A DNA stretch of 64,000 nt, taken from contig NC_068989.1 in assembly GCF_001194135.2 (NCBI RefSeq), forward strand, positions 32,250,300-32,314,299, read 5' to 3'. This DNA comes from Octopus bimaculoides. Its lineage: Eukaryota. The notes under the pieces were generated by a model. It worked only from the letters and a program-made list of their open reading frames with translations. It made no database searches and was not told the origin of the DNA. Of this stretch, positions 42,701-54,700 are shown piece by piece. Each line of letters starts with the position of its first letter. Position 1 is the stretch's first letter. The translations under genes were made by a program, and so were the position numbers.

Positions 42701-45700
42701 GAAAACAATTTCAGGAATAAAATGGTATCAAAGGATATTAAATTTACATTCAATTTCTATACCTAAAAACTGTTGGGGAACCTAATAAGGATAATGGAAC
42801 CCATATCTCATTTGCATACTGTTAACTAACAGTAAAATCAGCATGTCATATAGTACTTATATACCATAATTACTTATTTTGATAGATTAGAAAGAAATGA
42901 AGCTAGCTAGCTTTGCTGGATTTGCAATGTCAGTATGACAAAGTGCAAATGTATTGGGAGAAAAATTAGGCATAAGAGACATGAGATGTAGTGTGCAAAA
43001 GAAGACTATGCTAGTATGGTCGTGTGATATAATTAAAGGACAGCTGCAGAAGTATCAATCATTAAATGTGAATGGAATCTGTGGAAGAAGGAGGCCTAGG
43101 CAGACATGGGATGAAGTAGGGAAGACCAAATTCAGGTTTTTGTGCCTCAGAGAGGAGAGGACAAAGATGATTGGTGATTTGTTGTGCTTGAAGAGACCTG
43201 TCCATCTCAGTGAAAAATCAGTCCCAAAAAGCATATCATTTATATCTTTGGCCTTGCACCTAATCTGTACTTGTCAAGCCTTTCCCACTAAATCATCTTT
43301 GTAACTTTCTTCATCCTTTCTTCTAAAAATAATTTTTTCATATCATTGAAATCTCCAAGCTACAAGATAGTGCATGATTAACCCTTTTGTTACTATATTT
43401 CTAACTAAAAAAACACCCCTGATGAGTTTCAATTAAATTCTAAAATAATCACGAATTTAGACTGGTTACATTAAACAACTCTAACTTGACATATTAACAT
43501 GAGTTTTGGAACACAATTGAAGAAACGCTTCTTAATTCTATTGCGTAACTTATGTCTCAAATGACTCAAATTGCAGGTACATACAGGTAAGTTCAGCAAA
43601 ATATAAAAATATATAAATTTTGTTTAACCCTTTCGTTACTATATTTCTGACCCTCATGAATTTCAATTAAATTCTAAAATAATCATGAATTTAGACTAGT
43701 CTCATTAAACACCTGTAACTTTTTTATTTATCAACATATTAATGTGATATTTGGAACATAATTGAAGAAAGGCTTCTTAATCAATTCTATTGCATAATTT
43801 TTGTCTCAAAGTGACTCTAATTACAGATAAATCCAGGTAAACTGAGCAAAATGTAAAAATATTTAAATTTTGTTTAAACATTACCATAGAAAATGTGTCA
43901 TCAGCTAATATTTAATTGGGTATGCAACAAAATTTTGATATAGAAGACTTGTGCACATCACTAGGTTATCAATTGAATTTAATGCACAGAAGAACAGGTG
44001 TACCATAAAGGTAAAATAAACTGAAATACTGGAATTTCATTTTGAAGAAAACTAGAAAATTGAATACAACTAAATGAAATATACTCACACATACATAAAT
44101 ACACAGGGACATATATAATAAAGATTTACAATAGAAATTAAATCAAAACTTGTCACTCACCTTACAGGTAAATGAAAATCACAGGTTAATTAACATTACA
44201 GGTAAATTAAAATAAAAAGTAAAACTAAGTAAATTTGAGAAATATTTATACAATCTTATTATATATGTATATACAAAAAATATTTACGCAATATTTCTAT
44301 CATGGAAAGTTGTAAAACATCCCACTCTACATACTGCAACCTTGCAGAATGCACATTGGAAAGACGTTTCAACTGGCCGTCCACTGGGAGTTTTTCTTTG
44401 TTGATCTAGACATTCACGGCACTACCTTTTGCAACCCCCAATTTTTTTCTAATTTATGTAGATCAGCTGAACTCAGAGGGATATCTTTCTAGCAGGCTTT
44501 GCTTTTCCTTCCTGCAGTTATTTGTTTGGAGGAATAACCTGCCCTCAACTGCGTTGCTAAAACTGCTCGGAACTGCAGATGGTCACACTGCTTGCGAACT
44601 CCTCCTGATTTGGTATATAATATGAATGCATTTACAATGCTCATGTTTACTATATATCAAATAAGGTATCGCCACCATTTATTACCTGGTCTGCCAACCA
44701 GATAATAACTCATAACCTGGTTCAGTTGATCCACACTGCCCATGTACCTGTTATAATTAAGGTTCACAAACAGGGTGCCATTTTCATCTTCACATGGTTG
44801 TGCACCGGTAGATAGAAAATTTATCTGCCTCTTATCTCTGTATGCGGTCGCTAGCAGATTTCCTTTCTGGTGTTGGATTATTTCATCTCTTGTTTTAAAT
44901 TTTGCCTTTTTTATATCCAACAGCAGTCCTTTTCTACTAGCCATTATTGTAGCACACATATACATTGTCACAGCTTCTAAATTCACCGCAAGTTTGACTG
45001 AACTAAAAGATCGGTCAAAAAATAATATACGGCCCTGGTTATGGTATGGAAGTGATAAATTCCAGACCACATCGTACCTTAGGCCATGCTGACTAACATT
45101 ATTGTCTCTTTTCTCTGTATAAAAACTAAATCCACAGCAGTACCCAGTATTTGCCTCACAAATTTTCCAAACTTTGATCTCCCATTTTGTGGGCTTTCCT
45201 GGCATATACTGTCGGAAGCGTACCCTTCCATTATACCCCACCATGCTCTCATCGACGGATAAGTATCTCTCAGGCTTGTAAAATGTTTTATATGCATTTT
45301 GAACGCAGTTGATGAGGGGTCTTATTTTAAATAAGGGATCAAAGCTTGGTTCTCCACGTACTGGGGTACTGCTAGTGTCTCTCACATGTAAATATTGATT
45401 CAGCTTCACGAATTGTACTCTCGTCATAATACTGGAAACATACTGATCGCCAGAAGGTTCCTGATTGCTCCAGTAATTTGTTATTCTGGGTAATTGTCTA
45501 ATACCCATAATAATATTTATGGCAAAAAATGCCCGTATTTCATCTACGGTTGCAGGAAACCACAAGCTATCTTTTTTTCCGGCTTGTTTACATTCTGCGT
45601 AACGGTTTGTTTCCACAGTAATCATATCAAACAAGCATGTTGGAAAAAATAAGAAAAAGAAGTCTAAAGGTTTTGCTTCCTGAGAAAGACTATGGGNNNN

Positions 45701-51700: not shown

Positions 51701-54700
51701 CATAATATTGTAAACATACTGGTCTCCGAAAGGTTCATGATTACTCCAGTAATTTGTAATTCTGGGTAATTTTCTTATACTCATGATAATATTTATGGCA
51801 AAAAATGCTTGTATTTCTTCTACGCTTGTGGGAAACCACAAGCTATCTTTTGTTTTCTTTTTTTCAGTTTGTTTACTTTCTGTATAACAGCTTGTTTCCG
51901 CAGTAATTGCTTCAAACAAGCTTACTGGGGTGTGAGGAAGTCTAATGGTTTTGATTTCTGAGAGAGACTGAGTAGGTCCAGTCTCTTTTGAAAAATCGTT
52001 GACAAAATAGGCGCAGGAGTGGCTGTGTGGTAACTAGCTTGCTTACCAACCACATGGTTCCAGGTTCATTCCCACTGCGTGGCACCTTGGGCAAGTGTCT
52101 TCTACTATAGCCTCGGGCCGACCAAAGCCTTGTGAGTGGATTTGGTAGACAGAAACTGAAAGAAGCCCGTCGTATATATGTGTCTGTATGTATGTATGCG
52201 TGTGTGTGTGTCCCCAGCATCGCTTGACAACCGATGGTGGTGTGTTTACATCCCCGTAACTTAGCGGTTTGGCAAAAGAGACCGATAGAATAAGTACTAG
52301 GCTTCCAAAGAATAAGTCCTGGGGTCGATTTGCTCGACTAAAAGGCGGTGCTCCAGCATGGCTGCAGTCAAATGACTGAAAGAAGNNNNNNNNNNNNNNN
52401 NNNNNNNNNNNNNNNNNNNNNNNNNNNNNNNNNNNNNNNNNNNNNNNNNNNNNNNNAAAGAATAAAATAATTTTTAATTTCTTACTCCAGAATTGCTGCT
52501 TTCAGTTTCAAATACAGAAATATCAGATTTATTTTTGTACACATGCTATTGTAGTTCACACATACATTTGCTCAATTTCTCCATATTTTCTGTTGAAAGG
52601 CCCTCAAATTCAGAATCACTGCTTGATAGCATGAAACTGTTATCCATTTTAAAAGTTGAAAAAAAATCGCCACAGAAAAAAAAATGTAGAAAAATTCTCC
52701 CAAAATTCGCAGAGCTAAGATATCCTGTCAAACAATGTTGGATACTGTCACTCACCTATTTACAAAGTGAAATCATGTGTTTTCACAAATGTACTGAGAT
52801 TTGTGCTGAAATTCACATTTAATTATTAATGGGTTCACTCAACTGGATTTTTCATCTGGGTTAGTATTGGAAGGGTTAATTGAAGACAATGTGAATAAGT
52901 ATTACATTTTACAAAGTAATCTGAATGCTAAATGGTTTAGACCAGGGGTAGGAAAACATTTTAGTGTGGTGGGCAAAAATTTCCAAAGAAAAAGGTCCAC
53001 GGGCAGATCACAAGTATATATCTAGGTACAGTTCAATATACATTAATAAAGATAAGTTTAATACGTTAAATTAACACGTAACATCTTCATTAACGCCACT
53101 GAATTTAAGACGTTTATATTACTTATGAGGCATTTCATATTTTTCAGCTAGAGTGTAGTTGGGTCTGAAGGGGTGGTACAAACCTAGCAATATGTGTTTT
53201 ATAGTGAAAACAATATTTCTATTCAAATGGCAATTACCAAATCATTTTCTGTTCAAGTCTAACCGTTTTAAGTCATAGTGGAAACATAACCTATGTCGCA
53301 AATAAGTATGCGAATATTGTATAAATTTTATAATTGAAAAATTTAGTATATTTTGTACATACAAGAATATATTTGATCATAGGCTTACTCAGTACGGACT
53401 AACTTGGTTTTAAGCATGTCAGTTCCAAGTTTTTTAAAATGCTTGTTGGTTATAATAATTTACTAATAATAGTTATTTTAATCTCTAGTTTGATGAACCA
53501 AAAGCTTTGTCCTATTGCCTAACTGCTGAAGAAATTTCCCTTTTGTTTTGTTAGTTCTTCTGTTCTGAGTCCCTGAGCAGTAACTGCTAACTTGAATTCA
53601 CTGAGAAGTATTGTTAACTAAGTTTGATTTTTTTTCTTCTTCATTATTGTGGCAAGCTCCCTTGTCGAAGCCAACAATGTTTTGAGAGAAACTGGCTAAC
53701 ATCCAATACACAAGTAATCCAAATAGACTCAAGTCAAATTCATAAAGTATGAAGACAAATTTTCTGACAAAGTTTGTTACATAAAGTAATTCATAATACA
53801 AATACTACTTTTGCCAACTTAAATTAAAAGAAAGATTGAACTATGCTACAATATGACCATAATGTATGCTCTGAACCTGAAAAGACCCTTTGTATTTAAC
53901 TGCCACTGTCTGCTTTTCGTTGAGAGCAAGTAAATTCTTCATTAAGAAGTCTGTGAGCTTGTTGACCTACTGATATGTTGAGCTGTATTCACTAAGTCAA
54001 TCCTTGGCAGAAACTGATCAGTGAATATCAGTAAGGTTTGAAAATGCTTTGTTGCATTAATGCCTGCCATCTTCAGAGTTGCAACATATTGCCTATAAAA
54101 GCCTTGTACCCATTTTTTTTTTTTAATGTTGCTTGATTCTAAAAAATGTAGCATTTGGAATTAGTGAGCTAAGGTAATACATTAAATGGTAATTTCAAAA
54201 TATTTGTGTTTAAAAAATTATATCATTATGGCATTCATTACTTACTTTGCAGAAGTATTTCTGAAAATTCCAAAATTCTGTTTCCTTAGGAATTGATTTA
54301 AATATTTCTATGATAATTACTGCTCAGTTGAAATTTATTTTATTACTCTATGAATTTCTCTTTTATTACTGAATTTCAGAAACCGCCTTTAAAGTTACCA
54401 GGTTTGTTGATTATAGATACACCTGGTCATGAATCATTTAGGTAAGTTGAAATATAGATTTATATTTAACTGCCATAATGCTAATGATATTACATTTAAG
54501 TTTAAAACAAAGAATAAAACTAAATTTATCAAATTTGATTTGAGAAAATCCTAGGCAATTTTACTATCTTGACTAAAAGTAGACTATAATGTTGTTTGGG
54601 CTAAATTTGACAGTATGCATAAAAGGAAAAGAAAACAATATTTCATACAAAAATAAAAGTATTATTTTAAAAAATCAAAAATTATCAGCTAAATTATTGC

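What the first reader, a model, noticed from the sequence alone, without database searches (positions are those of the whole stretch)
43300..52940. Three-level piggyBac nest: a transposon inserted into its own family's internal TTAA, inside another TTAA repeat
Copy B (43628-46292, perfect 14-bp TIR) sits at a TTAA about 245 bp inside copy A. B retains the same site empty at 43874-43877 (aattttgtTTAAacattaccatag), and removing B restores it in A. Copy A (43382-52875, decayed TIRs) in turn splits an older repeat at a TTAA: its joined flanks (gcatgaTTAAttgaagacaatgtgaataag..ttacatttt..gtaatct) match an unsplit copy at about 39531-39595. A is further cut by an RTE, a Helitron, a 2.4-kb RTE and a SINE. 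About 9.5 kb of this 11.75-kb intron between the G2 and G3 exons of an essential GTPase is one stack with a readable insertion order. Repeated piggyBac-into-piggyBac insertion suggests self-targeting or a safe-harbour effect.
Basis: partly seen in the sequence, partly recalled or inferred. Interest (0 to 1): 0.7.

Follow-up and report, generated by a model that had tools for sequence, protein, structure and literature searches.

The report
Dead piggyBac nested in older piggyBac
One decayed piggyBac transposon really did insert into an older, more decayed copy of its own family inside an intron of an octopus-like eIF5B gene, but this is ordinary transposon layering and nothing here shows that the element targets itself.

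Summary
The core observation holds. Copy B (43628-46292, perfect 14-bp inverted ends, TTAA on both sides) sits in a TTAA 243 bp inside copy A (43382-52875). Removing B restores the site GTTTAAAC, which B itself still carries uninterrupted. B encodes a full-length piggyBac transposase domain (Pfam E=1.9e-71) plus the zinc finger, but the gene is broken by two stops and a frameshift. A is clearly older: 12.0% private changes against 3.5% for B, 29 against 8 CpG losses, and four further inserts. Those inserts are two LINE pieces, a Helitron-compatible element and a SINE. The host intron (42625-54379, 11,755 bp) lies between the G2 and G3 exons of eIF5B. The N gaps do not touch any junction. The gap inside B stands for one base in a sister copy from Octopus sinensis, and that base restores the reading frame. 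The third level is weak: a 60-bp similarity, better than chance, that reaches only 6 bases past the TTAA. "Repeated" piggyBac-into-piggyBac insertion is not seen; there is one such event. The same internal site is empty in the three other copies I could read. Random TTAA choice plus neutral survival inside junk explains the stack. This is ordinary and of low interest.

The parts
42514..42624 (+). eIF5B exon carrying the G2/switch I motif ([37 protein letters not shown]). The intron starts with gtaagt at 42625.
42625..54379 (+). Host intron of 11,755 bp as assembled, including 792 N whose real length is probably much smaller.
43378..43381 (.). TTAA target-site duplication, left of copy A.
43382..43623 (+). 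Copy A, 5' part (matches B coordinates 5-250, 78% identity). Terminal repeat cccttttgttacta, with a CpG to TpG change relative to B.
43624..43627 (.). TTAA: the internal target site of A, and the left copy of B's target-site duplication.
43628..46292 (+). Copy B: a complete but dead piggyBac element with perfect 14-bp terminal inverted repeats. The internal site GTTTAAAC is uninterrupted at 43872-43879.
44300..45956 (-). B transposase gene. The N-terminal acidic region, the DDE_Tnp_1_7 domain and the zf-Tnp_2 finger are present. It is broken by two in-frame stops (about 44654 and about 44486) and a frameshift before the finger. The 110-N gap (45697-45806) stands for one base.
46293..46296 (.). 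TTAA: the right copy of B's target-site duplication. A resumes here.
46297..46761 (+). Copy A, continued (B coordinates 255-582 and 843-998). A lacks B 583-842, which includes the zinc-finger coding part.
46762..47275 (-). 5'-truncated LINE 3' fragment, 77-81% identical to the tail of the LINE at 48813-51273, flanked by a probable ATAAT duplication.
47276..47310 (+). Copy A, short piece (B coordinates about 994-1029).
47311..48677 (-). Helitron-compatible insert. CTAG lies at the left end (the 3' end on the - strand) and ..GA at the right end (5' TC on the - strand). It is inserted between A and T with no duplication. It holds the 611-N gap 47709-48319. A partial second copy lies at 61456-61574.
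48678..48812 (+). Copy A, continued (B coordinates 1030-1164).
48813..51273 (+). LINE with a decayed reverse transcriptase (RVT_1 after stitching frames) and many stops. It is 71-76% identical to copies at 25487-26434 and 56789-57720.
51274..52006 (+). Copy A, continued (B coordinates 1172-1235 and 1387-2068 and beyond). It carries decayed transposase coding sequence on the - strand and is contiguous across the point where B has its gap.
52007..52467 (+). SINE, 92% identical to 40876-41257. Its tail holds the 71-N gap 52386-52456. The 3' limit is approximate.
52468..52875 (+). Copy A, 3' part (B coordinates about 2230-2669). Decayed terminal repeat tagtattggaaggg.
52876..52879 (.). TTAA target-site duplication, right of copy A.
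39528..39588 (+). 60-bp sequence similar to the joined flanks of A (GCwTGATTAATT...GTAATCT). This is the proposed 'unsplit older repeat'.
54380..54441 (+). eIF5B exon carrying the G3 motif ([20 protein letters not shown]).

Best explanation
This is a fossil stack made by independent, sequential transposition events into one intron of eIF5B.

1. A piggyBac element (A) integrated at a TTAA in the intron and duplicated that TTAA.
2. A then decayed. It lost CpGs, its terminal repeats eroded and parts of its transposase gene were deleted.
3. During that time A received two LINE insertions, a Helitron-like insertion, a SINE, and a second element (B) of a younger subfamily of the same piggyBac family.
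4. B's transposase cut in at one of A's roughly 18 TTAA sites, the palindromic GTTTAAAC 243 bp from A's 5' end, again duplicating the TTAA. B later died in place, with two stops and a frameshift.

No special mechanism is needed. piggyBac integrates at TTAA and has no self-avoidance. Insertions that land in already dead transposon sequence inside an intron are neutral, so they persist.

Shown: the junctions, the duplications, the family assignment and the relative ages. Inferred: neutrality, survivorship, and the order of the other four inserts relative to B.
For: - Junctions: A-left ends at B coordinate 254 and A-right restarts at 251, so only the TTAA is shared. Joined A reads ...aaattttgtTTAAacatcaccatagaaaatgag, against B's ...aaattttgtTTAAacattaccatagaaaatgtg.
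- Family: B has DDE_Tnp_1_7 at E=1.9e-71 covering 2-349 of 349 profile positions, and zf-Tnp_2 at 25.3 bits. It matches the solved piggyBat and piggyBac transposases at E=4.5e-27 and 3.7e-24, with aspartates in the three motif positions.
- Relative age: A and B are 83.3% identical over 2013 sites. CpG to TpG/CpA changes number 29 in A against 8 in B.
- Three-way comparison with an O. sinensis copy gives private changes of 12.0% for A, 3.5% for B and 5.2% for E. A carries four other inserts and B carries none.
- No hotspot: the internal site is conserved and empty in B, in the copy at 29303-29919 and in the O. sinensis copy.
- Chance level: before B arrived, the family held 29 of 486 TTAA sites in the window.
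- Assembly: the gap in B equals one base in the sister copy and restores the frame.
- Literature: piggyBac shows no self-avoidance (PMC3952818). Nested insertions are routine and are used to order repeats in time (PMC2672092, PMC6911290, PMC5932611).
Against: - A single window cannot measure the genome-wide rate of same-family nesting, so a mild preference for own-family DNA or for this site is not excluded.
- Part of A's 12% private divergence may reflect subfamily difference rather than age. A shares a 12-bp segment with the old copy at 29303-29919 that B and E lack.
- The scaffold joins across three N gaps are taken from the assembly. The one at 47709-48319 cannot be checked.
- The orthologous intron in a second species could not be fetched (one search returned no cephalopod eIF5B).
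Confidence: 0.88

Rival explanations
1. Self-targeting or a site hotspot. The family's transposase prefers its own DNA, for example by binding subterminal repeats of a resident copy, or it prefers the particular internal GTTTAAAC. Same-family nests would then be commoner than chance.
For: - B landed 243 bp from A's 5' end, in the subterminal region where piggyBac transposases bind (established knowledge).
- The site is an 8-bp palindrome that occurs only 3 times in the window.
- The site is conserved in all four copies.
Against: - It is one event. The site is empty in 3 of 4 copies read.
- 6% of the window's TTAA sites were already family sequence.
- A was already old and diverged when B arrived.
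- In cell assays piggyBac shows neither self-avoidance nor a described attraction to its own copies (PMC3952818).
Confidence: 0.05
2. Assembly artefact. A and B are collapsed haplotypes, a tandem duplication, or two unrelated piggyBac loci joined wrongly across the N gap inside B.
For: - The scaffold has three estimated gaps in the region, and one of them (45697-45806) lies between the two nest junctions.
Against: - A and B differ at 17% of sites and by many indels, far beyond haplotype divergence.
- Both junctions are a terminal repeat plus TTAA abutting A-type internal sequence, in exact register. A tandem duplication would not produce that.
- The two sides of the gap abut, with one base missing, when compared with an independent O. 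sinensis copy.
- A-left and A-right have the same level of identity to B (78-84%).
Confidence: 0.03
3. A true three-level nest. A itself split an older interspersed repeat at a TTAA, and an intact copy of that repeat survives at 39528-39588.
For: - The joined flanks of A align to 39528-39588 with score 33, against 24.6 +/- 2.1 for 200 dinucleotide shuffles, none of which reached it.
- The alignment runs through the TTAA, with 5 of 6 matches to its left.
Against: - The match is only 60 bp at about 78% identity with a 4-bp indel. Only 6 informative bases lie left of the TTAA.
- 30% of random 140-bp pieces of this window find an equally good partner.
- No third copy was found, and there are no ends or other features that define an element.
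Confidence: 0.35

Closest known systems
piggyBac superfamily DNA transposons (Trichoplusia ni piggyBac, Myotis piggyBat; animal gene models named 'PGBD4-like')
   Same: - TTAA target duplication.
- Terminal inverted repeats beginning CCC...GGG.
- DDE_Tnp_1_7 transposase with a C-terminal cysteine-rich finger.
- The nearest intact proteins are 55-59% identical. They come from unnamed ENA assemblies and from bivalves (Pinctada, Pecten).
   Different: - Both copies here are dead. No intact octopus protein of this family was returned, only fragments absorbed into gene models (P0023, P0035).
Nested transposable-element insertions used as a stratigraphic record (REANNOTATE, PMC2672092; nested LTR elements, PMC6911290; nested and double insertions in Drosophila, PMC5932611; nested MULEs, PMC3903597)
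   Same: - A younger element interrupts an older one.
- Excising it in silico restores the host element.
- The order of insertion can be read off and agrees with divergence.
   Different: - Here the host and the guest belong to one piggyBac family.
- The setting is a cephalopod intron.
- No enrichment analysis exists for this case.
Suicidal autointegration of piggyBac and Sleeping Beauty (PMC3952818)
   Same: - It shows that piggyBac transposase will use TTAA sites inside piggyBac DNA and has no target immunity.
   Different: - Autointegration is an excised element inserting into itself, which gives deletion circles or inversions.
- Here a complete element sits inside a separate, already diverged copy, so this is an ordinary intermolecular insertion.
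Helitrons (non-autonomous)
   Same: - For the insert at 47311-48677, read on the - strand: a 5' TC, a 3' CTAG, a GC-rich palindrome 8 nt upstream of the CTAG, and insertion between A and T without duplication.
   Different: - The hairpin is no more stable than shuffled sequence.
- There is no Rep/helicase coding sequence in the readable part.
- 611 bases are unread.
- It contains a short LINE-tail-like segment.

Membership tests
piggyBac superfamily (copy B) | TTAA target-site duplication flanking the element | tested here: met
   TTAA at 43624-43627 and 46293-46296. The same TTAA is single in B's own homologous site and in two other copies.
piggyBac superfamily (copy B) | Short terminal inverted repeats beginning 5'-CCC...GGG-3' | tested here: met
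   ccctttcgttacta / tagtaacgaaaggg, 14/14.
piggyBac superfamily (copy B) | Transposase with the DDE_Tnp_1_7 (PF13843) catalytic domain | tested here: met
   E=1.9e-71, 241.6 bits against a cut-off of 22.4, covering profile positions 2-349 of 349. Matches PDB piggyBat 9c0f at E=4.5e-27 and piggyBac 6x67 at E=3.7e-24.
piggyBac superfamily (copy B) | Catalytic DDD triad | tested here: inconclusive
   Aspartates are present in SVDES, FFDRS and SVDQL, aligned to the LSLDEG, YMDNYY and GVDRADQ motifs of piggyBat. That these are the catalytic positions rests on my knowledge of the T. ni enzyme and was not checked against a structure here.
piggyBac superfamily (copy B) | C-terminal cysteine-rich DNA-binding finger (PF13842) | tested here: met
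   zf-Tnp_2 at 25.3 bits against a cut-off of 24, E=2.3e-5. It lies in a shifted frame and holds an internal stop.
Autonomous (active) piggyBac element | Uninterrupted transposase reading frame | tested here: not met
   Two in-frame stops and one frameshift in B. A has large deletions and many stops.
piggyBac superfamily (copy A) | TTAA duplication, recognisable terminal repeats, and colinearity with a family member | tested here: met
   TTAA at 43378-43381 and 52876-52879. Ends match 10/14. A is colinear with B over 2013 aligned sites at 83.3% identity.
Helitron (insert 47311-48677) | 5' TC and 3' CTRR termini, with insertion between A and T and no duplication | tested here: met
   Read on the - strand: TCTATATATA... 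at the 5' end and ...CTAG at the 3' end. The flanks A|T restore the B-like sequence tttacta|tata. A second partial copy ends in the same ...AGA|T.
Helitron (insert 47311-48677) | Stable subterminal 3' hairpin | tested here: inconclusive
   CCTGGGCAAAGCCGGG lies 8 nt from the CTAG, but it folds at -3.2 kcal/mol with z=-0.06 against shuffles.
Helitron (insert 47311-48677) | Rep/helicase gene, or a demonstrable relation to an autonomous Helitron | not tested
   There is no long ORF in the readable 756 bp, and 611 bases are N.
RTE-clade LINE (48813-51273 and 46762-47275) | Reverse transcriptase domain | tested here: met
   RVT_1 at E=2.8e-17 after stitching three frames. The single frames gave nothing.
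RTE-clade LINE (48813-51273 and 46762-47275) | Placement in the RTE clade rather than another LINE clade | not tested
   The only lead is a short 3' tail ending in GAT-type repeats. No phylogeny or reference RTE comparison was run.
tRNA-derived SINE (52007-52467) | Short non-coding repeat in several copies, with a tRNA-like head | tested here: inconclusive
   Four copies in the window, 78-92% identical. ARAGORN finds no tRNA in them. Box A and box B-like motifs were seen by eye only.
eIF5B / IF2 translational GTPase (host gene) | G1 GHVDTGKT, G2 [11 protein letters not shown]3 DTPGHE and G4 NKxD motifs, in order on one strand | tested here: met
   Exons at 40451-40519, 42514-42624, 54380-54441 and 59160-59309. 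The best database relatives are named translation initiation factor 5B and are 62-88% identical.

The most novel reading that the evidence does not exclude
The conserved internal palindrome GTTTAAAC, about 245 bp inside the 5' end of this octopus piggyBac family, is a preferred landing site for the family's own transposase. One possible cause is that transposase bound at the nearby subterminal repeats of a resident copy captures an incoming element. If so, same-family nests at this exact site would recur across the genome.
Probability: 0.04. Interest if true: 0.55.

Novelty: new member of a known kind. Interest (0 to 1): 0.15.

Why it matters
It matters little beyond annotation.

- The locus is a clean worked example of reading insertion order from nested repeats in a cephalopod genome.
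- It shows that about 80% of one intron of an essential gene is layered transposon debris.
- It shows that estimated N gaps in this assembly can stand for a single base.
- It flags two public gene models (P0023 'PGBD5-like', and P0035 'DNA polymerase delta subunit 3') that contain decayed pieces of this transposon family.

A genome-wide test could change this. If own-family TTAA sites turned out to be over-hit, that would be a new target-choice property for a piggyBac transposase, with some interest for vector design.

Tried and rejected
1. Fetching the orthologous eIF5B intron from a second octopus. A protein search with 174 aa of the window's eIF5B exons returned only short, non-cephalopod proteins (at most 88% identity). 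No ortholog could be looked up, so the search confirmed only the identity of the gene.
2. Independent confirmation of the B/A-right junction. I looked up the 76-aa ORF that spans it (46197-46427) in public assemblies, and it is not on record.
3. Pfam on single reading frames of the 2.4-kb LINE gave nothing. Only the frame-stitched RT region matched.
4. ARAGORN on the SINE copies found no tRNA.
5. The Helitron 3' hairpin is not more stable than shuffles. No further copy of that end exists in the window.
6. Haplotype collapse or tandem duplication was rejected on 17% divergence and on the structure of the junctions.
7. Autointegration was rejected as the mechanism, because a complete B lies within a separate, diverged A.
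8. The outer repeat was considered as a TTAA-type (piggyBac-like) element. It was rejected because the sequence next to the TTAA at 39538 and at 52880 does not begin with the CCC-type end and no inverted partner is seen.
9. A literature search for piggyBac, nested and octopus together found nothing specific.

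
Full report
**What is in the sequence**

Reading 43200-53100 and comparing copy B with the whole window confirm the main observation.
- B occupies 43628-46292.
- It begins ccctttcgttacta and ends tagtaacgaaaggg, a perfect 14-bp inverted repeat. 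Position 15 mismatches.
- It is flanked by TTAA at 43624-43627 and 46293-46296.

Sequence homologous to B lies on both sides of it.
- 43378-43627 aligns to B coordinates 1-254 at 78% identity.
- 46293-46604 aligns to B coordinates 251-582 at 84% identity.
- The two halves of the outer copy A therefore overlap by exactly the four bases TTAA, which is the signature of a piggyBac integration.
- B keeps the same site uninterrupted at 43874-43877 (aaattttgtTTAAacattaccatag).
- Joining A's halves gives aaattttgtTTAAacatcaccatag.

A continues, colinear with B, in pieces at 46608-46761, 47276-47310, 48678-48812, 51274-52006 and about 52468-52875. It ends gttagtattggaaggg followed by TTAA at 52876-52879, and it starts after TTAA at 43378-43381. 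Its ends match each other at 10 of 14 positions.

**Family**

B's minus strand encodes a transposase.
- It matches Pfam DDE_Tnp_1_7 over the whole profile (E=1.9e-71).
- A zf-Tnp_2 finger follows at 25.3 bits against a cut-off of 24.
- It matches the solved piggyBat and piggyBac transposases, with aspartates in the three conserved motifs.
- The gene is dead. It has two in-frame stops and a frameshift before the finger.

The closest intact proteins are 55-59% identical. They come from unnamed ENA assemblies and from bivalves. Only fragments come from Octopus sinensis (P0023, 83% identical) and O. bimaculoides (P0035, 89% identical). The window is therefore very probably from an octopus, which is an inference.

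**The gaps**

The scan's program asked that the gaps be tested first. None lies at a junction.

Gap 45697-45806 is inside B's reading frame.
- In a sister copy fetched from O. sinensis (L001), B coordinates 2073 and 2184 map to positions 10269 and 10267.
- Exactly one base therefore separates the two sides.
- On the coding strand that base gives ...GGG TCT ACC CAT..., which reads GS-T-HSL, as in protein P0023.
- A gap of 110 would break the frame. A gap of 1 keeps it.
- Copy A is also contiguous across this point.

Gap 52386-52456 lies in the last few bases of a SINE. Comparison with the copy at 40876-41264 suggests that only a few bases are missing.

Gap 47709-48319 lies inside a foreign insert, and nothing can be said about its continuity. 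A's sequence does resume exactly where it stopped, so whatever fills this gap is inserted material.

**The other inserts in A**

- 46762-47275 is a 5'-truncated LINE tail on the minus strand, 77-81% identical to the tail of the next LINE. It has a probable ATAAT duplication.
- 48813-51273 is a decayed LINE on the plus strand. Its reverse transcriptase is recognisable only after stitching frames (RVT_1 E=2.8e-17). I did not test its assignment to the RTE clade.
- 47311-48677 has Helitron-type ends when read on the minus strand: 5' TC, 3' CTAG, and a GC-rich palindrome 8 nt upstream. It sits between an A and a T with no duplication, and removing it restores the B-like sequence. A partial second copy at 61456-61574 ends in the same way. 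The hairpin is no more stable than shuffled sequence, and no Rep/helicase is visible. 'Helitron' is therefore compatible but unproven.
- 52007 to about 52467 is a SINE, 92% identical to the one at 40876-41257.

**Host gene**

- The exons at 40451-40519 (GHVDTGKT), 42514-42624 ([10 protein letters not shown]), 54380-54441 (DTPGHE) and 59160-59309 (NKxD region) are eIF5B.
- The intron 42625-54379 is 11,755 bp as assembled.
- The stack 43378-52879 is 9,502 bp of it, including 792 N.

**Insertion order**

Three independent lines say A is older than B.
1. A is interrupted by B and by four other elements. B is interrupted by none.
2. Among sites where one copy has CpG and the other TpG or CpA, A carries the decayed state 29 times and B 8 times. 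A keeps 15 CpGs and B keeps 47.
3. In a three-way alignment with the O. sinensis copy (1853 sites), private changes are 12.0% for A, 3.5% for B and 5.2% for the O. sinensis copy.

Part of A's excess may be subfamily difference. A shares a 12-bp segment with the old copy at 29303-29919 that B and the O. sinensis copy lack. B, at about 3.5% from its nearest node and with a broken gene, is itself not recent.

**The third level**

- The joined flanks of A align to 39528-39588 (60 bp, about 78% identity, one 4-bp indel).
- The score of 33 exceeds all 200 dinucleotide shuffles, which averaged 24.6 with sd 2.1. The similarity is therefore real.
- However, 30% of random 140-bp pieces of this repeat-rich window do as well.
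- Only six informative bases lie to the left of the TTAA (5 of 6 match).
- Nothing marks this as an element, still less a TTAA-type one.
- I rate 'A split an older repeat' at about one in three.

**Self-targeting**

- There is one piggyBac-into-piggyBac event, not repeated ones.
- The internal site GTTTAAAC is conserved in all four copies that cover it. It is empty in three of them: B, the copy at 29303-29919, and the O. sinensis copy.
- Before B arrived, family sequence held 29 of the window's 486 TTAA sites, and A alone held 17-18.
- piggyBac has no self-avoidance in cell assays (PMC3952818).
- Nested insertions are commonplace and are routinely used to order repeats (PMC2672092, PMC6911290, PMC5932611, PMC3903597).

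The economical explanation is random TTAA choice followed by neutral survival inside dead transposon DNA in an intron. A mild own-family preference cannot be excluded from one window. The test is a genome-wide count against composition-matched TTAA sites, which these tools cannot run.

**Artefact rivals**

- Collapsed haplotypes and tandem duplication are excluded by the 17% divergence between A and B and by the structure of the junctions.
- A wrong scaffold join across the gap in B is unlikely, because the two sides abut to the base when compared with an independent copy.

**Verdict**

The two-level nest is real and correctly read. The third level is doubtful and the mechanistic suggestion is unsupported. 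This is an ordinary example of transposon stratigraphy involving a previously uncharacterised, extinct-looking piggyBac family of octopus.

Noticed in passing
window 1682-2262 and 29303-29919: There are two more fragments of the same piggyBac family. One is on the + strand and covers B coordinates 993-1598 at 84-88% identity, lying next to N gaps. The other is on the - strand and covers B coordinates 1-653 at 72% identity, with a decayed end cccattcattacta next to TTAG. The second one shares a 12-bp segment with A that B lacks, which hints at an older subfamily.
   Followed up: partly
L001 9738-12160 (Octopus sinensis CM016871.1): The NCBI gene model 'piggyBac transposable element-derived protein 5-like' (P0023, 206 aa) is the N-terminal part of a decayed copy of this transposon family. 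It is not a domesticated gene. The copy's 5' 134 bp are replaced by a tRNA-like repeat (about 12160-12205), and a long (TA)n run flanks its 3' TTAA.
   Followed up: partly
protein P0035 (UniRef A0A0L8GW45, Octopus bimaculoides): The gene model named DNA polymerase delta subunit 3 ends in about 75 residues that are 89% identical to B's transposase. It is probably an annotation chimera that absorbed an intronic or downstream copy of this family.
   Followed up: no
window 40876-41264, 1411-1623, 405-620: There are further copies of the SINE that interrupts A. The one at 40876-41264 sits in the preceding eIF5B intron, between the G1 and G2 exons.
   Followed up: partly
window 42880-43250: The left flank of A is itself a LINE 3' fragment on the + strand. 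It has an ORF with the motif [12 protein letters not shown] and is 65-69% identical to LINE copies at 25587-25831 and 57130-57377. The stack therefore sits next to yet another repeat.
   Followed up: partly
window 61456-61660 (- strand): A partial copy of the Helitron-like element lies directly downstream of a LINE tail ending in GATGATGATGA. The insert in A also contains a 35-bp LINE-tail-like segment (47432-47465). The relation between this element and the LINE family is unexplained.
   Followed up: no
window 45697-45806 and 52386-52456: The assembly's estimated gap lengths (110 and 71 N) appear to stand for about 1 base and a few bases. Other N runs in this scaffold, and the intron lengths derived from them, may be similarly inflated.
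   Followed up: yes
(database behaviour): A search with 174 aa of highly conserved eIF5B returned only proteins of 304 aa or fewer and no cephalopod sequence. Full-length eIF5B proteins seem not to be reached by this route.
   Followed up: no
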